Virus record (IMG/VR): IMGVR_UViG_3300035183_000733
Location: 1 to 64,000 of that record
DNA length: 64,000 nucleotides
Reading direction: 5' to 3' (one strand)
Shown: positions 30,299-53,662 of the stretch, one piece after another
Layout: each line of letters starts with the position of its first letter
Numbering within the stretch: the first letter of the stretch is position 1
Notes under the pieces: model-generated
The model's input: only the letters and a program-made list of their open reading frames with translations
What the model was told of the DNA's origin: nothing
Database searches by the model: none
Program-made: the position numbers and the translations under genes

Positions 30299-30475
30299 AT
30301 GGCAAAAACAGCTAAAAAGTCGACAGCAAAAAAAGCTAAGGCTACTAAAAAAGCAAAGCCTGCGGCTAAGAAAGCTGCGGTAAAGAAAACTGCTAAACCT
30401 GCGAAGAAGAGCACGCCGAAGGCGAAGGCTACTCCGAAGGCTGAGCCAGCGAAGAAGGAAACTTCACCTCGCTAA
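30299..30475 (+). CDS. 58-aa histone H1-like Lys/Ala/Pro-rich protein
   Basis: MAKTAKKSTAKKAKATKKAKPAAKKAAVKKTAKPAKK...; below ORF-track cutoff. Confidence 0.75.
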   Translation: MAKTAKKSTAKKAKATKKAKPAAKKAAVKKTAKPAKKSTPKAKATPKAEPAKKETSPR

Positions 30476-30650
30476 GCTCAAAAAGGTTGTGTGACGTCGC
30501 TGAGGGAACCCAGTGGACACAGAGGATTATCGTTCCATTCCAGATTGACCATCCTCAAGCAACACTCTCCTGAAAACTGGCGTACGCCCGGAGCAATCCG
30601 GGCCGCGGCCAAGCTGAGTCTCTTAGCCCCCTAAGGCTCAGCGGAACATT

Positions 30651-30777
30651 TGTCGAGTACAACTGGAGGTCAAGCGCTGATCAAAGGTGGTCCTGACGGG
30701 AAGCAGCAGTCTAATTAACTGCTGGAGCCCGATCAAACTCAGCAAAGGAAGTGCGGGTTCGAATCCCGCCTCGACGG
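30651..30777 (+). ncRNA. enlarged tRNA-like RNA (127 nt)
   Basis: TGTCGAG/CTCGACG acceptor, GCGGG-TTCGAAT-CCCGC T arm, multi-hairpin interior. Confidence 0.6.
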
Positions 30778-30958
30778 CAGTGCAAGAACTACGGTGAACA
30801 TGGGTTCGTCCCTCCGCCGTAGTTTTTAAAAATGAATTAAAAACCGAAACAATTCGGGATATATAGAGTATAAAGATAAGATTGTTCTACCTTATTCCCA
30901 ACAAATGGCAGATATACAAACAGGGACTTGCCAGGTAAAATAGTCGAACTAAAAAGAC

Positions 30959-31045
30959 ATGAAGAAGTATAACGCATATCAGCAGTATAATCAAAATCAG
31001 AATCAAAGTTCTGGGCTGAGCGTTATTTCCCCATTTGAAAAGTAG
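30959..31045 (+). CDS. attenuator leader peptide (Tyr/Asn/Gln-rich, 28 aa)
   Basis: MKKYNAYQQYNQNQNQSSGLSVISPFEK*. Confidence 0.85.
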   Translation: MKKYNAYQQYNQNQNQSSGLSVISPFEK

Positions 31046-31065
31046 TAACACACTATACAACGCGT

Positions 31066-31097
31066 AAAAGGCCCAGGACAAAATCCTGGGTCTTTTT
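31066..31097 (+). terminator. attenuator terminator of the Asn/Tyr/Gln tRNA operon
   Basis: GGCCCAGGA-CAAAA-TCCTGGGTC-TTTTT. Confidence 0.85.
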
Positions 31098-31101
31098 ACT
31101 T

Positions 31102-31190
31102 GGGTGGATTACCGTAGAGGCCGAACGGTCCAGACTGTTAATCTGGTGTGACGACGAGTCCCATCGCAGGTTCGAATCCTGCTCCGCCCG
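31102..31190 (+). tRNA. tRNA-Asn(GTT), long variable arm
   Basis: CCAGA-CT-GTT-AA-TCTGG, G73. Confidence 0.9.
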
Positions 31191-31226
31191 CAAAAATAGG
31201 TCCGACACGGGTAGATAGTAAATTAT

Positions 31227-31300
31227 GGACATGTAGCTCAGCAGGTCAGAGCAGCTCACTGTTAATGAGAAGGCCGGGGGTTCGAATCCCTCCTTGTCCG
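31227..31300 (+). tRNA. tRNA-Asn(GTT)
   Basis: cloverleaf. Confidence 0.95.
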
Positions 31301-31305
31301 CAAAT

Positions 31306-31380
31306 TTCTTGGGTGAGTCGGCTGTTTATTACGCGCGCAGCTGACGGTTGGAAGAAGAGGTTCGAGTCCTCCCTAAGGAG
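31306..31380 (+). ncRNA. D-armless tRNA-like element
   Basis: TTCTTGG/CTAAGGA, GAGG-TTCGAGT-CCTC, single GTCGGCTG/CAGCTGAC arm. Confidence 0.4.
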
Positions 31381-31390
31381 CAACAAATAT

Positions 31391-31480
31391 GGGTGTACGG
31401 TCGCGACGGTGGAGCGACCCCAGTCTGTAAAACTGGGACATTTAAAGAAACGCCGGGGGTTCGAAATCCCTCTACACCCA
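31391..31480 (+). tRNA. tRNA-Tyr(GTA)
   Basis: CCAGT-CT-GTA-AA-ACTGG; 8-nt T loop. Confidence 0.85.
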
Positions 31481-31485
31481 CACAT

Positions 31486-31567
31486 TGAGGAGCGCTAACG
31501 TTGGAGAGTTAGACCAGTCTGTAAAACTGGTGCTTCGGCTGAGTGGGTTCGAATCCCATCTCCTCAA
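31486..31567 (+). tRNA. tRNA-Tyr(GTA)
   Basis: cloverleaf with class II arm. Confidence 0.9.
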
Positions 31568-31574
31568 CTTAAAT

Positions 31575-31658
31575 TGTCCGATCGCCTAATGGCATGGCGC
31601 CGGGTTTTGGCCCCGGTGGGAAGTAATTCCTGTGTAGGTTCGACCCCTGCTCGGACAA
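31575..31658 (+). tRNA. tRNA-Gln(TTG), long variable arm
   Basis: CCGGG-TT-TTG-GC-CCCGG; GGGAA-GTAA-TTCCT arm. Confidence 0.9.
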
Positions 31659-31776
31659 CAAGACATCGACAGAGGTACTCGTCCGCAGACGTGTGGAAAA
31701 GTGTGTGCTTGCGACCATTAAAGTCTCTGTGTATCCCAATAGGTAGGAAGTAATTACTCTGAATGATTGGGAATAC

Positions 31777-31849
31777 TGTCCTGTAGTGTAACTGGCAACA
31801 CGTCGGGTTTTGGCCCCGAAGATTCCAGGTTCGAACCCTGGTGGGACAA
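31777..31849 (+). tRNA. tRNA-Gln(TTG)
   Basis: cloverleaf. Confidence 0.95.
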
Positions 31850-31887
31850 CAAAACGAAATTTATTTCGTATCTTTGAAGTATTATAT

Positions 31888-31960
31888 TGTCCTGTAGTTC
31901 AACTGGCAGAGCGCCTGATTCTGGATCAGGATGTTGGAGGTTCGAACCCTCCCGGGACAA
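31888..31960 (+). tRNA. tRNA-Gln(CTG)
   Basis: CCTGA-TT-CTG-GA-TCAGG. Confidence 0.95.
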
Positions 31961-32045
31961 CATGGGAATTAAGAACAACAATTAGTAGATAGATGCTGTA
32001 ATCCTAAATACACACAAAAGACTGGTGGCGGATATATTTGGAAAT

Positions 32046-33587
32046 ATGAGCATAATAACTAAAAAAGATTCGGGGAGGGTACGCGTACGTTTCGCGCCCT
32101 CCCCTACGGGACCCCTGCACTTAGGAGGGATCAGGACCGCATTATACAACTACCTGTTTGCTAAGAAGCACGGCGGCGATTTCATACTTCGCATCGAAGA
32201 TACCGATGCGATGAGGTTCGTGCCAGGCGCCGAAGAGTATATCATCGAAGCGCTGAAGTGGTGCGGTATATCGCCCAACGAAGGCGTTGGATTTGGCGAT
32301 GGTCCGCATGCACCATACAGGCAGTCGGAGAGAAAATCCATTTACAAGGAATACGCTATTAAGCTCGTGGAGCTCGGCCATGCATACTATGCGTTTGATA
32401 CTGGGGTATCGCTCGAAGAGAGACGCGCTGTCAACAAGAATTTTATGTATAACGGGGTGACTCGCGAGTCGCTGAGAAATAGTTTGACGTTGTCTTCTGA
32501 TGAGGTGAAATCGCTATTAGACTCGGAGACGCCGTACGTTATTCGGTTTAAGATACCGCGCAACACCGAGGTCGTGGTTAACGACATAGTTCGTGGTGCA
32601 ATAAGGGTCAACACGAACACGCTCGACGACAAGGTATTGTTCAAGAGTGACGGCATGCCTACTTACCACCTGGCGAACATTGTGGATGACCATCTCATGG
32701 GGATCACCCATGTAATCCGAGGTGAGGAGTGGTTGCCGTCTGCCCCGCTGCACGTTCTTTTGTACGAGGCTCTCGAGTGGGACGCCCCAGAGTTCTGCCA
32801 CCTTGCGTTGATACTTGGGCCTAACGGCAAGATGAGCAAGCGCGACATGGATTCTCTCGGGTTCCCAGTGTACCCGCTTGATTGGACAGATCCCAACACG
32901 GGGGAAAAGGCATCCGGATACCGTGAGATGGGATTCCTACCGGAAGCGTTCATCAACATGCTTGCGTTCATCGGATGGAACCCCGGCAACGGCAAGGAGA
33001 TAATGGGTCTCGACGAGATGGCAGAGGTGTTCGACCTCAGGAAGGTTCAGAGAGCTGGTGCCAAGTTCGACCCAAAGAAGGCGGAGTGGTACAGCAAGGA
33101 GTACATGAGGGTCGCTGACGACGCCGTGCTCGTCGAGAAGTGGATACCGGATCTGTGGGATAACGTTGATAAAAGCATTCCGCTTTCTCGCGTTTCTTCC
33201 GAGTACCGCACGAAGGTCGTCCACTTACTGAAGGAGAAGGTGGCATATCTCGGAAAGTTTTGGGAGAACGGCAGTTACTTCTTTATTGATCCAACCGATA
33301 TGTCGGTGCTCGATGAGTTGGCCGCGTCTAATGATAAGGTAACTCCGTTTATATTAAGCATGATGTCTAAGCTGATCGCCGATGATGTATTCGATATGAC
33401 TACCACTAAGGCTTGCTTTGATTCTGCCATAGCAGAATCCGGCATTGAGCCGCGCGAGGCCGGTAAGGCATTGCGTGCTGCAGTTTGCGGCAACAAAGTG
33501 GGGCCGCCGATGTTCGACATATTGGTGGTGCTCGGAAAGAACACCACGTTGTCTCGTCTTAAGAACTGCGCAACTGCACGAAGCTAA
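32046..33587 (+). CDS. gltX: glutamyl-tRNA synthetase
   Basis: RFAPSPTGPLHLGG, LRIEDTD, HVIRGEEW, KMSKR. Confidence 0.95.
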   Translation: MSIITKKDSGRVRVRFAPSPTGPLHLGGIRTALYNYLFAKKHGGDFILRIEDTDAMRFVPGAEEYIIEALKWCGISPNEGVGFGDGPHAPYRQSERKSIYKEYAIKLVELGHAYYAFDTGVSLEERRAVNKNFMYNGVTRESLRNSLTLSSDEVKSLLDSETPYVIRFKIPRNTEVVVNDIVRGAIRVNTNTLDDKVLFKSDGMPTYHLANIVDDHLMGITHVIRGEEWLPSAPLHVLLYEALEWDAPEFCHLALILGPNGKMSKRDMDSLGFPVYPLDWTDPNTGEKASGYREMGFLPEAFINMLAFIGWNPGNGKEIMGLDEMAEVFDLRKVQRAGAKFDPKKAEWYSKEYMRVADDAVLVEKWIPDLWDNVDKSIPLSRVSSEYRTKVVHLLKEKVAYLGKFWENGSYFFIDPTDMSVLDELAASNDKVTPFILSMMSKLIADDVFDMTTTKACFDSAIAESGIEPREAGKALRAAVCGNKVGPPMFDILVVLGKNTTLSRLKNCATARS

Positions 33588-33605
33588 TGAGTACTATGCC
33601 GTATA

Positions 33606-34271
33606 TCAAGCCGCGCTATTCTTGATTCTTCGAGTCCACTTCTTTCTGACCTTCTTTATGTTCAGTAAAAGATTTCTCTCTTTTTTAATCATGTTGTCGA
33701 CCTTGCTTATTGTGGTACCCAGTTCCTTCGCGATGTCTTTCATTATCACGTCACCCCGATGCTTAAGTATTATGTTTAACGCCGGGTATTTGTTCGGACA
33801 TTTACGTAGCACATGCTTGGCCTTGTCGAGCTTGTCGAGCTGTACATCGTACTTTTTTCGGACCATCTCCTTTACCTGAAAGTGTATGTTTGAGTCTATG
33901 CCGGCATACCTCCTATACACGGACATGGTCTCGTTGCCCGAGAGGTGTAACTTGACATCCTCACATCTGTCGTACTTTGAATCTTGTTTGATCCATTGCA
34001 AGCACTCCATGTATGCTATATGATGCAGCCAAGTGGTGAATTTAGACTTGGTCTTGTCAAATTTTTTATGATACTGTAACAACCGCAAGAATGTCTGCGA
34101 CACTATATCGTCAGCAACTATAGGCCCCACTTTATTTGCTGCAAAATGCCGAATTTTCGACCCGAACACCTCGAACGCCATACCGACGAGCTCGGGGTCC
34201 TCGGCAATGCCATCTTGTATTATCCTTACCTTGTCTTTGTCCATAAGCATTATATCGCGACCATGACGCAT
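33606..34271 (-). CDS. sigma-70 (ECF-like) sigma factor
   Basis: DDIVSQTFLRL...FDKTKSKFTTWLHHIA; C-terminal HTH IAKELG. Confidence 0.8.
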   Translation of the reverse strand: MRHGRDIMLMDKDKVRIIQDGIAEDPELVGMAFEVFGSKIRHFAANKVGPIVADDIVSQTFLRLLQYHKKFDKTKSKFTTWLHHIAYMECLQWIKQDSKYDRCEDVKLHLSGNETMSVYRRYAGIDSNIHFQVKEMVRKKYDVQLDKLDKAKHVLRKCPNKYPALNIILKHRGDVIMKDIAKELGTTISKVDNMIKKERNLLLNIKKVRKKWTRRIKNSAA

Positions 34272-34340
34272 GTTTCGCGTATGAATATTGGTTATATTGG
34301 TAGATAAATATAGGGCGCTGATAAATTAAATACAAACAAC

Positions 34341-34655
34341 ATGGCAAAAGAGATTACAGATTCAAACTTCGCAGAGATTATAGGCCAGGACAAATTGGTC
34401 GTGGTTGACTTCTGGGCGGAATGGTGCGGCCCCTGCCGCATAGTTGGGCCGGTAGTAGAGGACCTCGCCAACGATTACGAGGGACGGGCGGTGATAGGCA
34501 AGGTTGACGTCGATACAAACCCGGAGACGTCTTTGAAGTATGGAATACGTAACATCCCTACGATCCTCTTCATCAAAGACGGACAGGTTGTCGACAAACA
34601 AGTAGGCGTGGCTCCGAAGTCGGTGCTCGAAGAAAAAATAAAGCGGCACCTGTGA
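34341..34655 (+). CDS. trxA: thioredoxin
   Basis: VDFWAEWCGPC. Confidence 0.95.
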   Translation: MAKEITDSNFAEIIGQDKLVVVDFWAEWCGPCRIVGPVVEDLANDYEGRAVIGKVDVDTNPETSLKYGIRNIPTILFIKDGQVVDKQVGVAPKSVLEEKIKRHL

Positions 34656-34924
34656 TGGTCTGGACTGAAGATAAGAAGGAGAAGGCTTAGCCGAACTCAT
34701 TAAGTACTTCGAGAAGCACGGCATCGGTGAGTGCATACAGCAGAGCGACTCTGCCATAATAGAGGCGCCCGATGTTCTAAGCCACATAGCCGATCGGATT
34801 CCCTCTCCCTCTTTCAGAATAAATTATCAGGAAACCGAGGAATATAAAGTCATAGAATCGTGTCGGTACGACCGAGTGCGCGCACGATGACATTAAAAAG
34901 CCCCAGATTGCTCTGGGCTTTTTG

Positions 34925-35809
34925 TTATTTAGTATCCTTGTTAAAATTCTCGAACATCTTCAGGTGCCTCATCTCGTACCTGTGTCCCTCGTGCGCGACC
35001 GGCTCCTTGAAATTTATCACACCGGCCTTCAGTAGGTCAGACCAGGATCCCGCGCTGTCTTCCGCGTCGTCGGTCTGAGGCATCACGCTCCGGTCTGGTG
35101 CGTCCTTAACCGGCTGAGAGGTCTTTTGCATGTTGCTTACGTTGCCCCAGATGTAATCGGCGGACTCGTCTTTGCCGCCATGCTCTATCTTTTTGTTGTC
35201 GTTCAGCACTTGCACCGTGGTGTCCGATATTTTTGAAATGACGTAAGTCTTGAGCTTGCGCTCGCTTATCTTTAGCAGGTTATCGCCCTCCACCCTTGCC
35301 ACTGGGAGATCCTTTAATTTGGCGACTATCGCCATCTGCACGGCCTTCAATACGGTCAGCGGATCCTCGTCAATAGTCATGTTCAGCGCGATCATAGTCG
35401 CATGGTCGTTCATGACGTAAACCCGTGACCACCTGTGGTGACCGTCTATGATATACTTGCCATTCAGTGTTATTATCGGAGCCTTGATGACTATCTCTTT
35501 GCCCTTGAGTATCTCTCCGAGCTGACCCGGGAATTTGCCCTCGAGCTGGAATTTGAGGGACTTGTCCACATCTATCTCGTTCTGCGTGGGGTGCAGTTTC
35601 CTCACCGGTATCTCTATCTTCGTGAACGATACCCTCTCGTCGCCGAGCTTCCCGTCGCGCCTCCCGGCCCTTATGGCGGCAACGATCTTATCGTCGTCGG
35701 CCATCTCGCCGAGCTCCTTTACGAACTCCTCGTAGCTGAGGTTTAGGAGGTTCTTAAGTTTGTGGAGCGCCTCCGGCTTGGCGGTGGCACCTGGTCCTTT
35801 TTCTGCCAT
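34925..35809 (-). CDS. ParB/Srx-like domain protein with C-terminal targeting-like motif
   Basis: LHPTQNEID...YIIDGHHRW; ends MRHLKMFENFNKDTK. Confidence 0.7.
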   Translation of the reverse strand: MAEKGPGATAKPEALHKLKNLLNLSYEEFVKELGEMADDDKIVAAIRAGRRDGKLGDERVSFTKIEIPVRKLHPTQNEIDVDKSLKFQLEGKFPGQLGEILKGKEIVIKAPIITLNGKYIIDGHHRWSRVYVMNDHATMIALNMTIDEDPLTVLKAVQMAIVAKLKDLPVARVEGDNLLKISERKLKTYVISKISDTTVQVLNDNKKIEHGGKDESADYIWGNVSNMQKTSQPVKDAPDRSVMPQTDDAEDSAGSWSDLLKAGVINFKEPVAHEGHRYEMRHLKMFENFNKDTK

Positions 35810-35871
35810 GTTTAACTGGTTCAATTTTATTATATATCCAGCGATATATACATAAATTAACTCAAGCAGAG

Positions 35872-36102
35872 ATGAAGAAACTTGGACAATTACTCGAGAA
35901 TTTCGACCAGACAAGGGTGCTCGAACTCATAGCCCAGATAGAGGCTGCACAGCAGGCAATGCAAGGAGCAGTGGCTTCCGTGAAGCTCGTGGAGGAAGAG
36001 CTCAGGGCAAACGGTCTCGGGTCGGTGGCAGAGAAGCTATCCGCGCTCGACTGGAACACCATCGACAGCATCAAGGAAGAGCTGCGCAATCAAGTCGCTT
36101 AA
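35872..36102 (+). CDS. small helical protein
   Basis: MKKLGQLLENF; GATATATA upstream. Confidence 0.7.
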   Translation: MKKLGQLLENFDQTRVLELIAQIEAAQQAMQGAVASVKLVEEELRANGLGSVAEKLSALDWNTIDSIKEELRNQVA

Positions 36103-36105
36103 ACC

Positions 36106-36429
36106 ATGAAGAACCTCAAGAAATACGAGGGCTTTGCCGGAGAGGATGACAACCTCAGCCACGGCAAGAACTACATGCTCATATCCAACCTCAAGAAGAT
36201 TAAGAGGATGGCATCGTACCTGCTCGACCGTGTTGATGATGAAGCTGACGTGGACGAGTGGGCGAAGGACCACATAGCCACATCGGCGGACGACATCGAG
36301 GAGGTGTACAATTTCATAAAGGGTAAGGAGGACGAGCCTGATGAACTGGTATCCGATTCGGAGAAACTGGATGACATTCCGGCCAGCATACCCGTGTCGA
36401 GCAGGCGAGGGAGACCGCGTATAAACTAA
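36106..36429 (+). CDS. small virion-type protein with targeting-like leader
   Basis: MKNLKKYEGFAGE; WAKDHIATSADDIEEVYNF. Confidence 0.7.
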   Translation: MKNLKKYEGFAGEDDNLSHGKNYMLISNLKKIKRMASYLLDRVDDEADVDEWAKDHIATSADDIEEVYNFIKGKEDEPDELVSDSEKLDDIPASIPVSSRRGRPRIN

Positions 36430-36566
36430 TGGAAGTTGCAAACCATCCGTACAAGGGAACAAATGAAGCACCTAAAGGCACTCCGCGCACGTAGACGAGA
36501 TGGCGATGATTACCAAGAAAGGTAAGAACGTCTACGTCGATAGCAGGCTGATAAAGGGACTCCAAC

Positions 36567-36851
36567 GTGAAGGAGCTCGAGGACAACGTCGCTCTGTATC
36601 ACGAGAAGACCGGTAATTGGATGGTGTCCAAGGGCAAGTTCTGGCTTTGGTTTGTCGACACAACAGAGTGGATAGAGAAGCTCAAGGCCGGGGAGTACGA
36701 CATGCTCATGTTCCCGTGGCGCAGACGGTTCGACTTTACGGCGGCGCCGATAACTGACGTTTGGAAGAAGAGTATGCAGAAGAATACGAGAGGTGCTGAG
36801 CATGTGATAGGACTCGTGGAAGGATTCGCTGACGAGGATAAGACGAAGTGA
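36567..36851 (+). CDS. hypothetical protein (5' part likely frameshifted)
   Basis: ORF followed by terminator. Confidence 0.5.
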   Translation: MKELEDNVALYHEKTGNWMVSKGKFWLWFVDTTEWIEKLKAGEYDMLMFPWRRRFDFTAAPITDVWKKSMQKNTRGAEHVIGLVEGFADEDKTK

Positions 36852-36950
36852 CCGATGGAAATAAGGAAGCCTGACAAAACGTCAGGCTTTTTCATTTGGC
36901 GCAGTTTGTGTATCTTGGTATAAAACTTTTAAAATAAAACTTTTACACAG

Positions 36951-37352
36951 ATGTTCGACGACAAATTTTTCGATGAGGTGTTTGCCAGTTTCGGCAAAAC
37001 CATGAAGTCTATAGAAGACGAGGCCAGCAAGTTCCGGAAGAGAATGGAAGAGCGCATGAAGGAGGTCATGGACCTCCCGCAGATGTTCGGCAAGCCGTAC
37101 AACTACAAGGTTGAGACCGGCGAGGACGCCAACAGCACCTGGAAGCAGGAGACCTGGACGGACAAGTCGGGCATGTTCAAGTACAGCCGCAAGACGGTGA
37201 CGGCCAAGACCGGCTCGAAGATGACCAAGGAGGACGAGGTGAAGGCGCCGACCGTCGACGAGCTTAAGGCCAAGATGGAGGAGCACGCGAAGAACCACGA
37301 GTATGAGAAGGCGGCCGAGCTGAGGGACATCATAAAGGAGATGTCAAAATAA
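36951..37352 (+). CDS. protein with C-terminal UVR (UvrB/C) motif
   Basis: KMEEHAKNHEYEKAAELRDII. Confidence 0.75.
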   Translation: MFDDKFFDEVFASFGKTMKSIEDEASKFRKRMEERMKEVMDLPQMFGKPYNYKVETGEDANSTWKQETWTDKSGMFKYSRKTVTAKTGSKMTKEDEVKAPTVDELKAKMEEHAKNHEYEKAAELRDIIKEMSK

Positions 37353-37533
37353 ATTAAGGGGCTTAACGCCCCTTTATTATTCTATAAGTATCTTGTATCA
37401 TCCCGGATTCGTCCAACCCGAATGCGAGCATCATGGGGTTCTCCAGGTCCTGTGATTTTATCACCACGAGGTAATCCCCTGTGCGTTTGTATATTTCGGC
37501 CCCCCGCTTATCAGTATGACGTGATGGTGCAGC

Positions 37534-37674
37534 TTAGGCTTCAGGACAGTGAAGTCGCCGGTGCCGATGGCTTGGATTAGGCGCACGGAGTTGGAATTTG
37601 GTGGTGTCCTCGGTCCCCGATTTGGCGACCATGGGGGGCAGCGCGAGTGCCAGTATAATGAACAATTTCTTCAT
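37534..37674 (-). CDS. small secreted or membrane peptide (approximate)
   Basis: MKKLFIILALAL signal-like start; promoter motif on - strand at 37686. Confidence 0.35.
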   Translation of the reverse strand: MKKLFIILALALPPMVAKSGTEDTTKFQLRAPNPSHRHRRLHCPEA

Positions 37675-37723
37675 CCCTTTTAATATATATATCGAAAGCA
37701 TTTTAAAATAACCCAACCATGAG

Positions 37724-37870
37724 ATGGCAAAGAAGTCGTTAAGCGCGCCGGTGAGGACACACCTGGCAAAGCCTAAAAAGAAAAGGGCAGGAGTCCACGC
37801 CAAGAGCAAGAGCTCCAAGATTAAGCGCTCGAAAAACTACAAGAAGCCGTACAAGGGACAGGGTAGATAA
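37724..37870 (+). CDS. 48-aa highly basic protein
   Basis: MAKKSL...KKKRAGVHAKSKSSKIKRSKNYKKPYKGQGR*. Confidence 0.7.
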   Translation: MAKKSLSAPVRTHLAKPKKKRAGVHAKSKSSKIKRSKNYKKPYKGQGR

Positions 37871-37876
37871 TACACC

Positions 37877-47535: not shown

Positions 47536-47629
47536 GTGAGATAGGTCAAGGCTCACAAATAGGCGGATACCGTTGGTTGGTAAGTTGCGATTGCATCAAA
47601 CGTGGGTTCGAGCCCCACTCCGCCTACCA
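47536..47629 (+). ncRNA. hairpin + D-armless tRNA-like RNA, copy 1 (CCA end)
   Basis: GTGAG-ATAGGTCAAGG-CTCAC; AGGCGGA/TCCGCCT-ACCA; T arm. Confidence 0.7.
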
Positions 47630-48016
47630 TTTTTCCGTTTTATAAATTTGCATCATGCAAGAACGGATTGCCGAGATACGAGAACTGCTCTGGATATAGG
47701 TGCAGACTCGGTCGGCGCCTCGTCCGCGGCCGGCAGTTGCCATATACCGGTGACCGGGAATATTCGGACAGAATTGGTACCGTACCAGGAGTTTCTATTC
47801 AGGAGCTGCGCGGGTGGACGCCGAGCGTGCAAGCGCCGAACTGTCGTGGCCGATGGAAACATTGAATATCTCGGGACATATTTTTCAAGGCGTGGATAAC
47901 CAACTGGCTCCGTGACTTCGACAATTTCCTCCGTAGGAAGAGAATGTGCGAAATAACGTCTATCTTCGAGAAACGATTGTGGACGCGAACAGCGTGGAGA
48001 ACGCGCAAGATATAAG

Positions 48017-48085
48017 GGCCCGTAGCTCAGTTGGTTAGGTTCAACGAGGACTGGAACGCGTTTAAGCCTCGAGTCATCCGGCCCC
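48017..48085 (+). pseudogene. degenerate tRNA
   Basis: GGGCCCG-TAGCTCAGTTGGTTAG start; no valid anticodon or T arm. Confidence 0.4.
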
Positions 48086-48103
48086 AACCGTGGTGAGGCG
48101 CAC

Positions 48104-48221
48104 GATGGATAGGTCAAGGCCATCAAATTTCGGCAGGTACCGTTGGTGTCTTATACACACTATACACGTAGCTGGTATGTTGAGATCACATCAAACGTGG
48201 GTTCGAGTCCCACCCTGCCGA
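48104..48221 (+). ncRNA. hairpin + D-armless tRNA-like RNA, copy 2
   Basis: GATGG-ATAGGTCAAGG-CCATC; CGGCAGG/CCTGCCG; same conserved linkers as copy 1. Confidence 0.7.
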
Positions 48222-48672
48222 CTTTTCTAATTCGTTCTTTTTATTTAATTTTGCCATTATGTGCAGGCTCGAAGAAATCAGATCATCGCTAATGGCTGAG
48301 GCCAGGGCCCAGGTGGACCGCATGCGTATAAACGTGAGCGTTCCTACGATGGACGGAAGGCCGACGAGCATGTCACGCAGCTGTGTATCGCGAACGAGAA
48401 GAAGTACAAGCTGAACCAGACATTCGACTCCATAGCGCTTCCGAAGCTGACGGTGGACTCGGTTGTTAACCCGTTCGCAGAGGAGGCCAAGCAGATAAAT
48501 AATGCAGCAGGAGGGCGAGTTCTTCAAGGCGTGGATACACAGCTGGCTGCGGTTTCCTTACGCGAGTCAGGAATATCCGTGCAAAAATGAAGTGGTGGAT
48601 ATATTGGCGATCTTTTGCCCTAACACAAAATGGACAGAAGCAAAAAATAAAACGCGCAGATGATTATTTACC

Positions 48673-48747
48673 GGTCCCTTAGCTCAGGTGGTTTAGAGCA
48701 AATCACTCATAATGATAAGGTCGGGGGTTCAAGTCCCTCAGGGACCA
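48673..48747 (+). tRNA. tRNA(CAT), probably Ile2 (lysidine, reads AUA)
   Basis: resembles bacterial Ile2 scaffold (GGTCCCT-TAGCTCAG...CT-CAT-AA); upstream leader uses only ATA for Ile. Confidence 0.85.
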
Positions 48748-48766
48748 CAATTAGAAAAGCAAAAGC

Positions 48767-49072
48767 ATGTCAGATTTTAAAGTAGAGCGGACTTACAAAG
48801 AAGTCGGCGTCATTAAGAAGCAGGGCACAGACCTAACACACCTCGTAACAAAGTTCAATGGTCCCCTCGATGGTCTTAAAACAATGACCGTCAAACCGGG
48901 CGTGGGCGAGTACTCGTGGGTGCAGAGCCTGATAGTCCCGCTCAAGAGCAACGAGACTATATACATTCACCCGGACCAGACCGGCGTCGGCGTCGGATTC
49001 GTCCGCATAATTCATTCCCATTTAAAGGCTATCGCCGTATTCCACAAGTCACATTTCGATACCATATTATGA
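48767..49072 (+). CDS. hypothetical protein
   Basis: 101-aa ORF. Confidence 0.6.
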   Translation: MSDFKVERTYKEVGVIKKQGTDLTHLVTKFNGPLDGLKTMTVKPGVGEYSWVQSLIVPLKSNETIYIHPDQTGVGVGFVRIIHSHLKAIAVFHKSHFDTIL

Positions 49073-49587
49073 AGTGCGTGAGAGTCGGCAAGTCGGCGAT
49101 TGTGGGCAAGGGACTGTTCGCGTGCGAGCCCATAAGACCAGGAGACGAAATCGCGGAATACGTCGGCCGCAAGCTAACCAACAAAGAATTCGACATCTTG
49201 TTCTCCGCGGGCATGTGGCTCTATGCAGTTTCCGTGCCGAACGGCGTTATCGACGCCGCGGGGGCGGAGTGGGACGGTTATCCTGCAAAGTTCAGCAACG
49301 ACGCCATGGGGCTAACAAGAACCGGCGCAAGGAACAACGCGACATTCAGGTACTCCGGCAAGAGGGGCAACTACCGGGTGCACATCGTGGCGACCAGGTA
49401 CATAAAATCCGGCGACGAGATATTCACTTCATACGGCCGGAGCTATTGGAGCAATTTTAAAAATGAGCAAGAACTAAATAGAGCAGCCTGCATTACTACG
49501 GTCTCGGTGAGGACCGGGAGAAGGATCCCCTCGACGACCCCCACTTCTACGACAGGATGCGGAGCATCGGATACACCAAGCGTGTGA
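49069..49587 (+). CDS. SET-domain methyltransferase
   Basis: GKGLFA...IAEYVG...AKFSND...NATF...IKSGDEIFTSYG..YW. Confidence 0.85.
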   Translation: MKCVRVGKSAIVGKGLFACEPIRPGDEIAEYVGRKLTNKEFDILFSAGMWLYAVSVPNGVIDAAGAEWDGYPAKFSNDAMGLTRTGARNNATFRYSGKRGNYRVHIVATRYIKSGDEIFTSYGRSYWSNFKNEQELNRAACITTVSVRTGRRIPSTTPTSTTGCGASDTPSV

Positions 49588-49767
49588 TACCGTTGCCGAT
49601 GAGGTGCGTCTGTATGTATATTACGAGCGACAAACCGGTTCGTCCATTGATGAATTGAAACCGGTATCCGGCCCGCGCAAGCATGAAATGAACGTGTATA
49701 CTGCTCTCGAGTATGTGTTCACCAAGAAGGTGCTTAATCACGAGGAGCTTCGCATATCCATAAAAGA

Positions 49768-50130
49768 ATGATAGGAGATATTTGTTTTTGGACGACCAGA
49801 GACAGCCGGATGAAGTTGTAGGTTACGAAGGCATAGAATGGAGTCGTAAAAAAACGGTCACGAATTCGAAGATTACCTGAACCAGAACGGTATCCCCGAC
49901 GTCATATCGTTTGACCACGACCACGACGACGAACATTACGACATAGACTGGGAGAAGGTATACTTCTTCGGGGAGCTATATTCGTACAAGGAGGACACCG
50001 GTTTGGACTGCCTTAAGAAGCTCATCCGCAGGCTCACAATGAAGGAACCGCATCCGGACAACTGGCCGAGGTGCACGTCGCATTCACTCAATTCGGTAGG
50101 CCGGGCCGAAATAAACAAACTCCTCGAAAC
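49768..50130 (+). pseudogene. cyclic-phosphate-processing receiver-domain gene, frameshifted
   Basis: fragments (F)LDD, GIPDVISFDHD, TGLDC. Confidence 0.5.
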
Positions 50131-50250
50131 TTGGTCGTTTCCTCAATTTGGCCAGGATATATAAGAAAACAACGCCGGAATTCAAGTCAACGCCGGAAGC
50201 ACTTTCTCCTATCCGGACAGGATATATAAGAAAAATATCAATCCTTAAAA

Positions 50251-50730
50251 ATGAAAATATTCAGGTTCGAAGAGTTCTCGGTCAACGAGAAACTAACCGA
50301 CGCTGGTCAGGACTATGTGTCGAAAAAGATCGCGAAGCTCCGCGGTGAGGGTAAGGGCCCAAAGCAGGCGGCGGCCATAGCGTACAGCTACGCAAGGCGC
50401 AAGGGATACAAGGTACCCGCGAAGAAAAACGAGTCGGACAACCCGCTCAACGACGATAACTCTACGCTCGACATCAAGACGATGACGTCGCTCCAGTTCT
50501 ACAAACTGATAGACCTGCTCGAGGCGGACATCACCGCATACGGGCAGGAGGATCTCCAGTACTACGAGGAGATGACTGGGCTCGACACAGGGACCCTGCT
50601 CGACCTCTACACAACATACGGTTACAACCTGCATAAATACGCAGAGACCGAGAAGCTCAAGAGGGCGTATATGAGTCACGCGGGTAAGACCTGGGAGCAA
50701 ATTAAAAAAGAAGCCGAAGAGGCCGAGTAA
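50251..50730 (+). CDS. virion-type protein with targeting-like leader
   Basis: MKIFRFEEFSVNE; tandem GATATATA promoters at 50156 and 50221. Confidence 0.75.
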   Translation: MKIFRFEEFSVNEKLTDAGQDYVSKKIAKLRGEGKGPKQAAAIAYSYARRKGYKVPAKKNESDNPLNDDNSTLDIKTMTSLQFYKLIDLLEADITAYGQEDLQYYEEMTGLDTGTLLDLYTTYGYNLHKYAETEKLKRAYMSHAGKTWEQIKKEAEEAE

Positions 50731-50732
50731 TC

Positions 50733-51533
50733 ATGGCAACAAGAAAAGCATTCCAAGGGGAGAACTACAAGAGGTCCGGCGAGTACGTAGGCAACTACAA
50801 CGGCGGCAGATCCGAGGTTCAGGAAATGACGAGCACCCTCAAGAGAAGGAACGTAAGGTCCATGGCGGGCAACAGCTCATACATCGGCAAGCGCGTCCTG
50901 CTCATACACAACAACGACCTCGAGAAGGCGGTCAAGGTGCTGAAGGAGTTCTACCCGAAGCACTACGCCACAGAGCTCGCGGCAAATCTTAAGAGGGATG
51001 TTGATACAGACAAGAAGATGGGTGTGTTCGAGAGTGGGATGAAGAACCTCATGACCTTTGAGAATTACTCACATAAAAAGGCAGTATTCGGTGATTTTTC
51101 CAAGAAGGACCAAGAGCAGATCGACTACTTTATAGAGAAGTTTGCGACCAAGATGGGTGGCACCACGAGACAATCAGCCGCATGGTGGGTCGATGGCATA
51201 ACAGAGATCAGCGACGATATCAAGCGTGCGGTATGGGCCGGGATACAGGAGTACATACCCAAGAGGCCGTTCCCTCTTAATAAGGCAGACTTACCTGAGT
51301 GGACAAATGAGTCCGAGCTTAAGGATGACAAGGCAGACGAGACTCACATCTCATTGACCGAGGATGACTTCCGTGCACTCGTTGCCGGCGAAATAATTAC
51401 TCCTGAGGACTTCCCGCCGCACCTGGACAAGCTAAAGCTCGCGCTGCAGGACATCGGCCAGGATAACATGATCCGTATAATAACGGACGAGATGTACAAG
51501 GCGCGCAAAGCCGGAGATAAAAATATGAACTAA
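50733..51533 (+). CDS. modular protein with internal targeting-like motif
   Basis: ...GVFESGMKNLMTFENY...WTNESE. Confidence 0.7.
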   Translation: MATRKAFQGENYKRSGEYVGNYNGGRSEVQEMTSTLKRRNVRSMAGNSSYIGKRVLLIHNNDLEKAVKVLKEFYPKHYATELAANLKRDVDTDKKMGVFESGMKNLMTFENYSHKKAVFGDFSKKDQEQIDYFIEKFATKMGGTTRQSAAWWVDGITEISDDIKRAVWAGIQEYIPKRPFPLNKADLPEWTNESELKDDKADETHISLTEDDFRALVAGEIITPEDFPPHLDKLKLALQDIGQDNMIRIITDEMYKARKAGDKNMN

Positions 51534-51606
51534 CCGGGAATCCTGAACCACTCTCACGGCAGAACACGGATGGAAGCACAGGAGCTACTCATAAAATAAT
51601 CATTAC

Positions 51607-51855
51607 ATGAATAAGATAAAGGACGCGCTATACTGGATGACGCACACGAAGCTCGGGTGGCTTTTAATATCGTTCGTGTGGTTCGCCGTGTTCATGGCCA
51701 TAGACAATAACGTGGAAGGATCCTGGGCTTTCTGGACAGCGATGCCCGCCCTCGCATACATAACGGGGCTGACACTCGTGATGATTGCGTACGCCTGGGT
51801 GATAAACCCCATAAGAGAGCACAAGGAAAACAAGAGGCTGCGGGAGGGAAAATAG
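51607..51855 (+). CDS. small two-TM membrane protein
   Basis: two hydrophobic helices. Confidence 0.7.
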   Translation: MNKIKDALYWMTHTKLGWLLISFVWFAVFMAIDNNVEGSWAFWTAMPALAYITGLTLVMIAYAWVINPIREHKENKRLREGK

Positions 51856-51928
51856 TTTTCTGACGGTAGCGTACGGTTAGAATAATTGTGTTATCTTTGT
51901 ATCTGTAACTAATAAAACTGTAAGTAAA

Positions 51929-52177
51929 ATGAAAAACATCTTCGTAAGCAGCTTGCCTTTCAAGCTGACTGAGAGCGAGCTTCAGGCCGCTTTCGAAAAG
52001 CATGGTGAGGTAACCTCTGCCAAAATTATCAAGGACCGCGAAACCAACCGTAGCAAGGGATATGGGTTCGTAGAGATGTCTGACGATGAAGCCGCAACAA
52101 AGGCTATCGCAGCTCTTAACGGTTCTGAGTTTGGTGGTCGTTCCATCATCGTTAATGAGGCACGCCCGAAAGCATAA
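51929..52177 (+). CDS. RRM (RNP-1) RNA-binding protein
   Basis: IFVSSLP...RSKGYGFVEM...IVNEARP. Confidence 0.95.
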   Translation: MKNIFVSSLPFKLTESELQAAFEKHGEVTSAKIIKDRETNRSKGYGFVEMSDDEAATKAIAALNGSEFGGRSIIVNEARPKA

Positions 52178-52237
52178 TAAAGAAAAAACAAAGTAATTGC
52201 AGCCGAAACAAAACGCGCCGCAGATATATAATGTACG

Positions 52238-52318
52238 ATGAAGCAAATGATTAACATAGTTCGAATTAGCAGAAGGCGCTCAGACGTCCTGTCCGGATTA
52301 TGTCCAATCGTAAGCTGA
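52238..52318 (+). CDS. attenuator leader peptide (Ile/Arg, 26 aa)
   Basis: MKQMINIVRISRRRSDVLSGLCPIVS*. Confidence 0.85.
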   Translation: MKQMINIVRISRRRSDVLSGLCPIVS

Positions 52319-52344
52319 TAACATCGCTTTTCTTTTGGGACAAG

Positions 52345-52373
52345 AAACCCGGACCTAATCGTCCGGGTTTTTT
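52345..52373 (+). terminator. attenuator terminator of the Ile/Arg tRNA operon
   Basis: AAACCCGGAC-CTAATC-GTCCGGGTTT-TTT. Confidence 0.85.
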
Positions 52374-52382
52374 ATTTTACAC

Positions 52383-52456
52383 TGGTGTGTGACCAAGCTG
52401 GTTAAGGCACCTCCCTGATACGGAGGAAATCGTGGGTTCGACTCCCACCGCACCAA
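52383..52456 (+). tRNA. tRNA-Ile(GAT)
   Basis: CCTCC-CT-GAT-AC-GGAGG. Confidence 0.9.
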
Positions 52457-52461
52457 CAAAT

Positions 52462-52514
52462 AGTCGCTTAGCTCAGTTGGTTGGTCCCCAGTTCGAGTCT
52501 GGAAGCGACTACCA
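52462..52514 (+). ncRNA. 53-nt tRNA lacking the anticodon arm, CCA end
   Basis: AGTCGCT/AGCGACT-ACCA; GCTCAGTTGGTT joined directly to GGTC-T arm. Confidence 0.55.
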
Positions 52515-52580
52515 AGCCAGTCAATATGCGGGATGGCTTGCATTGTTACCGGACATTAAACCACCCGGGCGTTAGAGAAT

Positions 52581-52654
52581 GCACGCGTAGATCAACTGGA
52601 TAGATCACCTGACTACGGATCAGGAGGCTGGGGGTTCGAATCCTTTCGCGTGTA
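52581..52654 (+). tRNA. tRNA-Arg(ACG)
   Basis: cloverleaf. Confidence 0.95.
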
Positions 52655-52716
52655 CAAAATGCCTCAGTAGTCCCGTCGGCTTCGGAACCGATAGGGCAGA
52701 ATATGAATTAAGATAC

Positions 52717-52789
52717 GGTCCCGTAGCTCAGCGGATAGAGCATTTGCCTTCTAAGCAAAGGGTCACTGGTTCGAATCCAGTCGGGATCA
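52717..52789 (+). tRNA. tRNA-Arg(TCT)
   Basis: TTTGC-CT-TCT-AA-GCAAA. Confidence 0.95.
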
Positions 52790-52803
52790 CAAAAAGTAAA
52801 GTT

Positions 52804-53209
52804 ATGAAACTGAACATCAAAAAAAGTAAAACAGATCCCTAAGGAAGTCAATTCCAAGTTCGGAGTGTGCATATTCGGGGAACCGGATGCTGAGGTGTCC
52901 ACATGGATTGCAGCGCACGGTTTCGAGGTAGAAAAAGTTGGTCCTTATACGAATGTGTACATCGACAAGGACATCGATGAGGTGTTCGAGCCGGCGGGGA
53001 AGTTCCAGTACATGGACGGGTTCAGCCCGAACATGAACAAGCACCTGCACGTTGGCCATCTGTCCAACCTGGTGCTCGCAAAGGCGTTCCTCGGCATGGG
53101 TGTCACCAATGGCACGGTGGCCATACTTGGCGACACTCTCGAGGGCGATGTTTCCAAGGACGAGGCGCTCGATAAGTTCAAGTTGTACGAATGGTCGTCA
53201 ACCGTGTAG
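52804..53209 (+). pseudogene. argS: arginyl-tRNA synthetase N-terminal fragment (frameshifted, truncated)
   Basis: GPYTNVYI...DGFSPNMNKHLHVGHL HIGH region; ends ~53188. Confidence 0.7.
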
Positions 53210-53652: not shown

Positions 53653-53662
53653 TGTATTGTCA

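What the first reader, a model, noticed from the sequence alone, without database searches (positions are those of the whole stretch)
30858..52789. Codon-sensing attenuators control four phage tRNA operons (overall system)
SEEN: four times the same layout: GATATATA promoter, a 22-28 aa MK-initiated leader ORF, a strong intrinsic terminator, then tRNA genes. The leader codons match the downstream tRNAs: Y/N/Q with Asn, Tyr and Gln; V/F/P with Phe, Pro and Val; H/W/ATA with Trp, His and CAT(Ile2); I/R with Ile and Arg. Each leader contains a 9-11 nt segment complementary to the 5' arm of its own terminator. KNOWN: ribosome-coupled attenuation controls amino-acid biosynthesis operons (trp, his, thr, ilv) and pheST. 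INFERENCE: the phage measures charged-tRNA supply per codon set and transcribes replacement tRNAs only on demand, e.g. after host anticodon-nuclease attack or starvation. I know of no description of leader-peptide attenuation of tRNA genes in phages.
Basis: partly seen in the sequence, partly recalled or inferred. Interest (0 to 1): 0.97.

Follow-up and report, generated by a model that had tools for sequence, protein, structure and literature searches.

The report
Leader-peptide attenuators controlling phage tRNA operons
Four tRNA gene clusters of this large phage each follow a tiny gene, whose codons match the tRNAs downstream, and a transcription-stop hairpin, which is the signature of a switch that makes more tRNA only when ribosomes run short of it; the same design occurs in unrelated phages, one of them cultured, and I found no published description.

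Summary
Four units (30858-31961, 42644-43458, 46534-47489, 52223-52790) share one layout: GATATATA motif, a 22-28 codon ORF, a strong intrinsic terminator, then tRNA genes. Each ORF is enriched only in codons read by its own downstream tRNAs (P = 1.4e-5, 5e-3, 3.5e-4, 3e-3; all 12 cross-comparisons non-significant).

In all four, a segment just after the control codons can pair either with the control-codon block or with the terminator's 5' arm. That is the classical attenuator geometry.

The leaders are conserved in five related metagenomic phages. Substitutions there are synonymous or switch between Arg codons, some helix changes are compensatory, and Pro codons rise from 1 to 3 where Pro tRNAs rise from 1 to 3.

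The same architecture, with different leaders that each match their own tRNAs, occurs in:
- the 634-642 kb huge phages LR745206.1, LR756502.1 and LR756504.1;
- the cultured Cellulophaga phage phi4:1.

It is absent from T5 and crAss001. Permuting leaders among clusters never reached the observed match (0 of 200,000).

Best reading: ribosome-mediated attenuation giving negative feedback on charged-tRNA supply. No experiment exists, and the anticodon-nuclease trigger is untested. Nine literature searches found no prior description.

The parts
30858..30865 (+). Unit 1 promoter-like motif GATATATA, with GAAACAA 5 nt upstream. It is followed by a conserved 93-nt 5' UTR.
   Evidence: Motif enrichment 16 versus 1.1 expected; context; conserved in L002 and L004.
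30959..31045 (+). Leader ORF 1, 28 codons. The TAG stop is followed at once by an in-frame TAA.
   Evidence: Conserved in L002 and, as a variant, in L004.
30968..31006 (+). Unit 1 control codons (codons 4-16): 12 of 13 are Tyr, Asn or Gln. Also acts as segment 1.
   Evidence: 12/14 in codons 4-17, P = 3e-10. Pairs with segment 2 in the MFE structure.
31008..31018 (+). Unit 1 segment 2: pairs either with the control-codon block or with the terminator's 5' arm (9 bp, -14.7 kcal/mol).
   Evidence: (P = 0.002-0.006).
31067..31097 (+). Unit 1 intrinsic terminator (12-bp stem, -18.3 kcal/mol, T-run).
31102..31961 (+). Operon 1 tRNAs: Asn(GTT) x2, Tyr(GTA) x2, Gln(TTG) x2, Gln(CTG).
42644..42651 (+). 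Unit 2 promoter-like motif GATATATA, with GAAACAA upstream.
   Evidence: AATATATA at the same place in L007.
42666..42743 (+). Leader ORF 2, 25 codons. Control codons 42687-42716 are 8 of 10 Val, Phe or Pro.
   Evidence: The L007 version has 3 Pro codons and 3 Pro tRNAs.
42722..42732 (+). Unit 2 segment 2: 9-bp complement of the terminator's 5' arm (-19.4 kcal/mol). Also pairs with 42704-42710 in the control block.
   Evidence: (P = 0.001-0.004).
42774..42811 (+). Unit 2 intrinsic terminator (-18.6 kcal/mol, long T-run).
42813..43458 (+). Operon 2 tRNAs: Phe(GAA), Pro(TGG), Val(TAC), Val(GAC).
46534..46541 (+). Unit 3 promoter-like motif GATATATA, with GAAACAA upstream.
   Evidence: Conserved in L017 and L014.
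46558..46626 (+). Leader ORF 3, 22 codons. Control codons 46570-46590 read I(ATA) H I(ATA) H H I(ATA) W.
   Evidence: The same peptide run with synonymous changes in L014 and L017.
46603..46613 (+). Unit 3 segment 2: interrupted complement of the terminator's 5' arm (-11.3 kcal/mol, weak). Pairs with 46587-46595.
   Evidence: (P = 0.11-0.13, not significant alone). Compensatory change in the 1:2 helix.
46654..46686 (+). Unit 3 intrinsic terminator (-20.9 kcal/mol).
   Evidence: Compensatory U-A to C-G change in L017.
46691..47489 (+). Operon 3 tRNAs: Trp(CCA), His(GTG) x2.
48673..48748 (+). tRNA(CAT), a possible Ile2 (ATA reader). Link to unit 3 is uncertain.
   Evidence: In L014, Ile(TAT) and CAT tRNAs sit in the same cluster. 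ATA is the commonest Ile codon in the window's genes.
52223..52230 (+). Unit 4 promoter-like motif GATATATA, only 7 nt before the ATG, with GAAACAA upstream.
   Evidence: Conserved in L010, L012 and L014.
52238..52318 (+). Leader ORF 4, 26 codons. Control codons 52262-52279 read R I S R R R (CGA, ATT, AGC, AGA, AGG, CGC).
   Evidence: L014 keeps R I N R R R with different Arg codons.
52290..52297 (+). Unit 4 segment 2: 6-bp complement of the terminator's 5' arm (9 bp in L014). Pairs with 52260-52271.
   Evidence: (P = 0.04-0.05; L014 P = 0.004).
52345..52374 (+). Unit 4 intrinsic terminator (-16.1 kcal/mol).
52383..52790 (+). Operon 4 tRNAs: Ile(GAT), Arg(ACG), Arg(TCT).

Best explanation
Each unit is a ribosome-mediated (leader-peptide) transcription attenuator placed in front of a tRNA operon. 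Steps 1-2 are shown at sequence level; steps 3-6 are inferred.

1. Transcription starts at the phage GATATATA-type promoter and the short leader ORF is translated at once.
2. The block of control codons (segment 1) can pair with segment 2 just downstream. Segment 2 can instead pair with the 5' arm of the terminator.
3. If the charged tRNAs that read the control codons are plentiful, the ribosome runs through to the stop codon, 19-33 nt before the hairpin. Segment 2 is then covered or re-paired with segment 1, the terminator forms, and the tRNA genes are not transcribed.
4. If any of those charged tRNAs is scarce, the ribosome stalls on the control codons and masks segment 1. Segment 2 captures the terminator's 5' arm, RNA polymerase reads through, and the operon that supplies exactly those tRNAs is made.
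5. The result is one negative-feedback loop per codon set. It sums host and phage tRNA supply and therefore switches phage tRNA genes on only when needed.
6. Possible causes of need are host tRNA decay or cleavage, a mismatch between phage codon usage and the host pool (for example the ATA-rich usage here), or amino-acid limitation.
For: - Layout repeated four times.
- Codon enrichment specific to the unit's own operon: P = 1.4e-5 to 5e-3, with no cross-enrichment.
- Frame specificity over 14 units: 37% cognate codons in the ORF frame against 13% and 12% in the other two frames.
- Segment 2 complement of the terminator's 5' arm: combined P = 4e-10 over 14 units, 8e-7 without the window. It always lies just after the control codons and before the stop.
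- Segment 2 pairs with the control-codon block in the pre-terminator MFE of all four window units.
- With a modelled ribosome on the control codons the terminator's 5' arm is sequestered; this drops once the ribosome covers segment 2.
- Conservation in relatives. Control-run substitutions in leader 3 are all synonymous. Leader 4 keeps its Arg run while exchanging AGG/CGC/AGA. There are compensatory changes in the 1:2 helix and in the terminator.
- Co-variation with content: 1 Pro codon with 1 Pro tRNA in the window, 3 Pro codons (CCC, CCA, CCG) with Pro(TGG) x2 plus Pro(CGG) in L007. One Arg in the control run (two in the leader) with 1 Arg tRNA in LR745206, two in the run (three in the leader) with 2 Arg tRNAs in LR756502.
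- Independent lineages with unrelated leaders that each match their own cluster: LR745206.1 has 7 units, LR756502.1 has 4, LR756504.1 has 1, and Cellulophaga phage phi4:1 has 3.
- Permutation of leaders among clusters: observed 5.15 against 2.16 +/- 0.37, 0 of 200,000 permutations reach it. With 19 units z = 9.7.
Against: - No expression data of any kind. Translation of the leaders, the transcription start sites and regulated read-through are all inferred.
- The antiterminator is weak in unit 3 and short in unit 4 of the window.
- In unit 1 (and in L007 unit 2) the stop codon lies about 25 nt beyond segment 2. A terminating ribosome would therefore not cover segment 2, and termination must rely on the 1:2 helix re-forming.
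- At equilibrium the antiterminator is predicted even without a ribosome, so the switch must be kinetic.
- Whether transcription and translation are coupled closely enough in the presumed Bacteroidota host is unknown.
- The tRNA identities and wobble rules are predictions.
Confidence: 0.8

Rival explanations
1. Opposite polarity. The leader is a translation test: a ribosome that translates it quickly follows RNA polymerase closely and suppresses the hairpin, so tRNA operons are read through when the cognate tRNAs are already plentiful and terminated when ribosomes stall. That would be positive feedback or licensing.
For: A ribosome close to a terminator is known to suppress it (abstract of PMC4824070, listed). 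Stop codons here are only 19-33 nt before the hairpins (coordinates).
Against: - A ribosome at the stop codon reaches only about 12-15 nt downstream, so it falls short of every hairpin.
- This model needs no antiterminator, yet a significant complement of the terminator's 5' arm sits right after the control codons in independent units.
- Positive feedback on a product that is already abundant has no obvious use.
Confidence: 0.07
2. The RNA, not the ribosome, is the sensor. The leader transcript binds uncharged tRNA or a phage protein (T-box-like or protein-mediated antitermination, for example by the RRM protein encoded next to unit 4), and the ORF is incidental.
For: An RRM-domain gene sits directly upstream of leader 4 in every relative. 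T-box elements are known to regulate translation-related genes.
Against: - No Rfam family other than tRNA matches anywhere in the window.
- The signal is at the level of in-frame codons for up to nine amino acids, which a single specifier-type RNA sensor cannot explain.
- Arg codons are exchanged between families while the amino acid is kept.
Confidence: 0.05
3. The small ORFs encode functional peptides, or the hairpins merely end short independent transcripts. The tRNAs would then be transcribed from elsewhere and the codon match would be chance or shared ancestry.
For: Leader 2 is hydrophobic and could be mistaken for a membrane peptide. Leaders 2 and 4 share their first eight codons, which suggests duplication.
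Against: - Permutation: 0 of 200,000.
- The signal is frame-specific.
- Unrelated leaders in four other phages show the same match.
- The peptide composition changes with the tRNA set.
- No other promoter-like motif lies between hairpin and tRNAs, which are only 3-12 nt apart.
Confidence: 0.03

Closest known systems
Classical leader-peptide attenuators of amino-acid biosynthesis operons (trpL, hisL, pheL, leuL, thrL; multivalent ilvL/ivbL)
   Same: A short ORF with clustered regulatory codons. Segment 1:2, 2:3 and 3:4 alternative pairings. An intrinsic terminator before the regulated genes. Sensing of charged tRNA through ribosome speed. Several amino acids sensed by one leader, as in thr and ilv.
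   Different: - The regulated genes are tRNAs, not enzymes, so the sensed molecule is the product itself and the loop reports tRNA amount as well as charging.
- The elements are phage-borne.
- Up to nine different amino acids sit in one leader (phi4:1 unit B).
- There is no Shine-Dalgarno sequence, and the 5' UTRs are very short or absent.
- The stop codon is sometimes well beyond segment 2.
pheST (pheM leader) attenuation in E. coli
   Same: Leader-peptide attenuation applied to a component of the translation apparatus that handles the sensed amino acid. In relatives of this phage, matching synthetase genes lie next to the attenuated tRNA operons.
   Different: The target there is a protein-coding synthetase operon of a bacterium, with a single amino acid sensed.
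T-box riboswitches
   Same: They adjust the supply of translation components according to tRNA charging, by terminator/antiterminator choice.
   Different: A T-box binds uncharged tRNA directly and has no ORF. No T-box match is present here, and the signal here lies in translated codons.
tRNA gene arrays of other phages (T5; Bacteroides phage crAss001)
   Same: Large phage-encoded tRNA sets thought to compensate for codon usage or host tRNA loss.
   Different: With the same detector, T5 (23 tRNAs) and crAss001 (23 tRNAs) have no terminator-plus-leader unit before any tRNA.

Membership tests
Ribosome-mediated (leader-peptide) transcription attenuator | Short ORF at the 5' end of the transcript, upstream of the regulated genes | tested here: met
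   ORFs of 22-28 codons lie 7-93 nt after a conserved promoter-like motif. They are conserved in relatives.
Ribosome-mediated (leader-peptide) transcription attenuator | Cluster of regulatory codons cognate to what the operon supplies | tested here: met
   Own-operon enrichment P = 1.4e-5 to 5e-3, with no cross-enrichment. The signal is frame-specific. Permutation over 14 and 19 units.
Ribosome-mediated (leader-peptide) transcription attenuator | Intrinsic terminator between the leader ORF and the regulated genes | tested here: met
   Hairpins of -16 to -21 kcal/mol plus a T-run, 21-30 nt after the stop codon and 3-12 nt before the first tRNA.
Ribosome-mediated (leader-peptide) transcription antiterminator pairing (segment 2:3) | A leader segment complementary to the terminator's 5' arm, mutually exclusive with the terminator | tested here: met
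   Units 1 and 2 are significant alone. Unit 4 is marginal in the window and clear in L014. Unit 3 is weak. Combined P = 4e-10 over 14 units and 8e-7 for the non-window units.
Ribosome-mediated (leader-peptide) transcription attenuator | Segment 1:2 pairing that overlaps the control codons, so that a stalled ribosome frees segment 2 | tested here: met
   In the pre-terminator MFE, segment 2 pairs inside the control block in all four units. There is one compensatory pair in each of the leader 3 and leader 4 alignments.
Ribosome-mediated (leader-peptide) transcription attenuator | The leader is translated and read-through rises when the cognate charged tRNA is limiting | not testable with these tools
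   Needs ribosome profiling, Term-seq or reporters. Indirect support only: synonymous and Arg-family codon exchanges.
T-box riboswitch | Match to the T-box leader model (specifier loop, T-box sequence) | tested here: not met
   An Rfam gathering-threshold scan of the whole window returns only tRNA.

The most novel reading that the evidence does not exclude
A modular tRNA homeostat is widespread in several lineages of phages that probably infect Bacteroidota. The tRNA arsenal is split into operons, each behind its own multi-amino-acid leader peptide. The phage thereby reads out, codon set by codon set, whether the cell can still translate. It answers host tRNA depletion, including cleavage by anticodon-nuclease defence systems, by transcribing exactly the missing tRNAs and, in some genomes, the neighbouring cognate synthetase genes. 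Under this reading the units are built-in sensors of a defence response as well as economy devices.
Probability: 0.3. Interest if true: 0.95.

Novelty: new variant of a known kind. Interest (0 to 1): 0.88.

Why it matters
- Phage tRNA genes are usually treated as constitutive cargo that corrects codon bias or replaces cleaved host tRNAs. Their regulation is essentially unstudied.
- If these units work as the sequence indicates, they extend a textbook mechanism to a new class of target (RNA genes, with the product itself being sensed).
- They show that phages monitor decoding capacity per codon set. They also give a direct, testable link between tRNA-targeting defence or starvation and phage gene expression.
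- They explain why the tRNA arrays of these phages are split into small groups with odd amino-acid combinations.
- They offer compact, programmable parts: a leader sequence defines which tRNA shortages switch a gene on.
- A cultured, harmless marine system (Cellulophaga baltica with phage phi4:1) carries three such units, so the idea can be tested at once.

Tried and rejected
- Close relatives were sought in IMG/VR with a protein and with three DNA patterns. Only the window's own contig (IMGVR_UViG_3300035183_000733) or chance hits without the architecture came back.
- A profile scan of JGI metagenome contigs found nothing. Relatives came only from Logan assemblies through protein look-ups.
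- The INPHARED phage collection holds no close relative of the window.
- Rfam gave only tRNAs at gathering thresholds. It gave nothing for the structured RNA at 30480-30830 even at E <= 1.
- My first terminator scanner (perfect stems only) missed three of the four window terminators and was replaced by a fold-based one.
- The equilibrium model of ribosome position shows the expected drop once segment 2 is covered. It cannot separate the 'no ribosome' state from the 'stalled' state, so it is weak support only.
- A crude test for TAG recoding (stop-to-stop frame lengths) was inconclusive.
- A tblastn search for the relatives' HisRS, class Ib synthetase and GatB_Yqey genes in the window found only the N-terminal third of the ArgRS-like gene.
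- I did not settle whether tRNA(CAT) 48673 is an Ile2 tRNA.
- I did not test whether host chromosomes carry similar units.

Full report
**What the window is**

The window is the first 64 kb of IMG/VR contig IMGVR_UViG_3300035183_000733 (373,759 bp). It is about 50% G+C and carries 23-25 tRNA genes. It also encodes a GluRS-type synthetase, a sigma-70-like protein, a UvrD-type helicase, an RRM protein and a PTH2 peptidyl-tRNA hydrolase. The synthetase is about 56% identical to those of Bacteroidia and Flavobacteriales, so the host is probably a member of Bacteroidota (inference). No close relative exists in the INPHARED phage collection.

**The observation**

| Unit | Leader ORF | Length |
|---|---|---|
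| 1 | 30959-31045 | 28 aa |
| 2 | 42666-42743 | 25 aa |
| 3 | 46558-46626 | 22 aa |
| 4 | 52238-52318 | 26 aa |

- GATATATA occurs 16 times in the window against 1.1 expected and sits before many ordinary genes, so it is a general promoter-like motif of this phage.
- The four leader copies, and one more at 19213 before the PTH2 gene, also share GAAACAA a few bases upstream.
- Each leader is followed after 21-30 nt by a 10-13 bp G+C-rich hairpin with a T-run (-16 to -21 kcal/mol).
- The first tRNA starts 3-12 nt after that.
- The other tRNA groups in the window (Cys plus CTA suppressor at 19744, Ser at 24580, Leu plus CTA suppressor at 42100, CAT at 48673) have no such unit.

**Codon match**

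I used wobble rules and the codon usage of ten long genes as background.

| Leader | Codons cognate to own operon | Binomial P |
|---|---|---|
| 1 | 12/27 | 1.4e-5 |
| 2 | 9/24 | 5e-3 |
| 3 | 7/21 | 3.5e-4 |
| 4 | 7/25 | 3e-3 |

- All twelve leader-versus-other-operon comparisons are non-significant.
- Within codons 4-17 the figures are 12/14, 8/14, 7/14 and 6/14.
- The Arg codons of leader 4 (CGA, CGC, AGA, AGG) are exactly those read by the Arg(ACG) and Arg(TCT) tRNAs downstream.
- ATA, used three times in leader 3, is the commonest Ile codon of the phage's genes (3.5%).
- The candidate ATA reader in the window, tRNA(CAT) at 48673, lies 2 kb downstream, so that one link is not secure here.

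**RNA architecture**

- In the minimum-energy fold of every unit the terminator forms, and the control-codon block pairs with a segment just downstream, still inside the ORF.
- In the transcript before the terminator, that segment 2 pairs with bases inside the control block in all four units.
- The same segment 2 is the best complement of the terminator's 5' arm:
  - 9 bp at -14.7 kcal/mol in unit 1 (P = 0.002);
  - 9 bp plus 3 more at about -20 kcal/mol in unit 2 (P = 0.004);
  - 6 bp in unit 4 (P = 0.04; 9 bp and P = 0.004 in relative L014);
  - an interrupted, individually non-significant pairing in unit 3.
- The order is therefore the classical one: control codons (segment 1), segment 2, stop codon, spacer, segments 3:4.
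- A simple model with a 30-nt ribosome footprint shows that the terminator's 5' arm is sequestered while the ribosome sits on the control codons, and less so once it covers segment 2. The model cannot reproduce the no-translation state at equilibrium, so the switch must be kinetic.

**Relatives of the window phage**

Protein look-ups found five related metagenomic phages in Logan assemblies.

- Leader 1 recurs in L002 and, with a changed tail, in L004.
- Leader 2 recurs in L007.
- Leader 3 recurs in L017 and the diverged L014.
- Leader 4 recurs in L010, L012 and L014.
- In leader 3 every substitution inside the control run is synonymous.
- In leader 4 the Arg run is kept while AGG, CGC and AGA are exchanged. 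This points to selection on what is decoded, not on the nucleotides.
- One His-codon change (CAC to CAT) is compensated in segment 2. One pair in the outer 1:2 helix of leader 4 and one terminator pair also change on both sides.
- Content co-varies. The window has one Pro codon and one Pro tRNA. L007 has three Pro codons (CCC, CCA, CCG), two Pro(TGG) and one Pro(CGG).
- In L014 the leader with three ATA codons is followed by Trp, His, Ile(TAT) and CAT tRNAs in one tight cluster.

**Independent lineages**

I wrote a detector that looks for a terminator within 110 nt before a tRNA and then takes the first ORF ending 0-70 nt before it. The ORF is chosen without regard to its codons.

- **Huge phages of Al-Shayeb et al. 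2020.** These are the 634-642 kb genomes (PMC7162821; sizes match). The detector finds seven units in LR745206.1, four in LR756502.1 and one in LR756504.1. Examples:
  - a leader with a run of Q before three Gln tRNAs;
  - one with S and R before Arg and Ser tRNAs;
  - one with Y and E before Glu and Tyr tRNAs;
  - one with H, K, F, S, W before His, Phe, Trp and Lys tRNAs;
  - one with N, L, T, V, I, R, M before an 18-tRNA cluster of just those specificities.
- **Cultured Cellulophaga phage phi4:1** (KT962245.1). The tRNA array is cut into three operons by three such units:
  - a leader with the run Q R L H L Q E L E Q P before Pro, Glu, Gln, His, Leu, Leu, Arg;
  - a leader rich in T, K, G, I, V, D, A, R, Y before Ala, Lys, Ile, Gly, Met, Asp, Thr, Val, Arg, Met. 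Its annotated start is doubtful; I used an internal GTG;
  - a leader with N, Y, S, W, F before Tyr, Ser, Asn, Trp, Phe.
- The phi4:1 units follow a sequence that looks like the Bacteroidota TTTG / TAnnTTTG promoter only a few bases before the ATG. The consensus is from my own knowledge of the promoter literature; the match is read.
- **Negative controls.** The same detector finds no unit in T5 (23 tRNAs) or in Bacteroides phage crAss001 (23 tRNAs).

**Statistics over units**

- For 14 non-redundant units the sum of own-cluster cognate fractions is 5.15. Permuting leaders among clusters gives 2.16 +/- 0.37 (maximum 4.22), and none of 200,000 permutations reaches the observed value.
- Centring on cluster size does not change this. 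With 19 units z = 9.7.
- Cognate codons make up 37% of the ORF frame but 13% and 12% of the two other frames of the same DNA.
- The complement of the terminator's 5' arm is significant over the ten non-window units alone (Fisher P = 8e-7). It always starts at codon 15-27, after the control run and before the stop.
- The gap between stop codon and hairpin is 19-33 nt in all 14 units (coordinates).

**Mechanism**

- Shown at sequence level: the repeated layout, the own-operon and in-frame codon match, the three mutually exclusive pairings in the right order, and conservation and co-variation across lineages.
- Inferred: the promoter, translation of the leader, stalling when a cognate charged tRNA is scarce, antiterminator formation and read-through.
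- The loop is a negative feedback on the very molecules the operon encodes. It would keep phage tRNA genes off while the host pool suffices and open them when it does not.
- Which shortage matters in nature cannot be told from sequence. Candidates are a mismatch with phage codon usage, decay of host tRNA during infection, cleavage by defence nucleases, or amino-acid starvation.
- The main weakness of the model is geometric. In unit 1 and in L007 unit 2 the stop codon lies too far downstream for a terminating ribosome to cover segment 2, so termination must depend on the local 1:2 hairpin re-forming.

**Comparison with what is known**

- The units meet every sequence-level criterion of leader-peptide attenuators and fail the T-box test.
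- They differ from known members in four ways: the target (tRNA genes), being phage-borne, the number of amino acids sensed by one leader (up to nine), and SD-less, nearly leaderless initiation.
- Nine full-text searches with varied terms returned nothing on leader-peptide or attenuator control of tRNA genes, in phages or in cells. The paper describing the huge phages does not contain the word stem 'attenuat'. The library does not cover all subscription journals, so an older description cannot be excluded.

**Verdict**

I rate it a new variant of a known kind of regulator with high interest, the more so because a cultured, harmless phage-host pair carries it.

Noticed in passing
window 30480-30830 (L002 about 6650-7300; L004 about 670-1290): A conserved structured-RNA candidate just upstream of the unit 1 promoter. 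It ends in a T-arm-like GGTTCGAATCC element and a hairpin with a T-run, and it is longer in the relatives. It has no Rfam match even at E <= 1 and was not called as tmRNA by ARAGORN.
   Followed up: partly
window 31102-31191, 31575-31659, 43088-43174, 47316-47401 (and L002, L004): Asn, Gln, Val and His tRNAs occur in pairs: an 85-90 nt copy with an extra arm next to a normal 74-77 nt copy. The long forms are conserved in relatives and score low against the Rfam tRNA model.
   Followed up: no
window 52464-52515, 47555-47630, 48130-48222: tRNA-like pieces that ARAGORN does not call as normal tRNAs. One seems to lack the anticodon arm. Two have odd anticodon loops or D-loop insertions and share a conserved upstream box.
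   Followed up: partly
window 19877-19952, 42187-42258, 19254-19619, 53207: There are two tRNAs with anticodon CTA (amber suppressors). The PTH2 hydrolase gene, driven by the same GAAACAA-GATATATA motif, has TAG as its third codon. An ArgRS-like frame (52814-54115) holds an in-frame TAG. These suggest partial TAG reassignment, but a crude frame-length test was inconclusive.
   Followed up: partly
window 30895-30952; L004 625-670: A conserved about 40-nt element lies inside the long 5' UTR of leader 1 and recurs before the large RNA in L004. It overlaps a small ORF in which the window's TAG corresponds to CAG (Gln) in two relatives.
   Followed up: no
L018 2072-3329; L012 8092-9264; L002 10001-12426; window 32046-33587: Synthetase genes lie beside the matching attenuated operons. 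HisRS-like and class Ib synthetase genes follow the Trp/His tRNAs. An ArgRS-like gene sits among the Arg tRNAs. GluRS, plus a GatB_Yqey protein in relatives, follows the Gln tRNAs. In the window the GluRS gene has its own GATATAT-like motif.
   Followed up: partly
window 51929-52177 (L010 9688-9936, L012 6744-6992, L014 10739-10990): An 82-aa RRM-domain RNA-binding protein gene lies directly upstream of leader 4 in every relative.
   Followed up: no
window 24106-24242, 24580-24654: An intron-containing tRNA-Asn is seen by Rfam and by ARAGORN in intron mode. There is also a tRNA-Ser with the unusual anticodon ACT, which is present in L002 as well.
   Followed up: no
window 30299-30475 and 53663-55090 (minus strand): A 58-aa Lys/Ala-rich, histone-H1-like ORF, and a glutamate-synthase-domain gene, both carried by the phage.
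   Followed up: no
L023 10356-10475 (KT962245.1 87989-88108, Phi4113_075): A 'hypothetical protein' annotated inside the phi4:1 tRNA array is one of the leader ORFs. The other two leader ORFs (L023 9432-9500 and 12138-12236) are unannotated. The position homologous to the ATG of the first unit is ATA in Phi4113_075, so its true start codon is unclear.
   Followed up: partly
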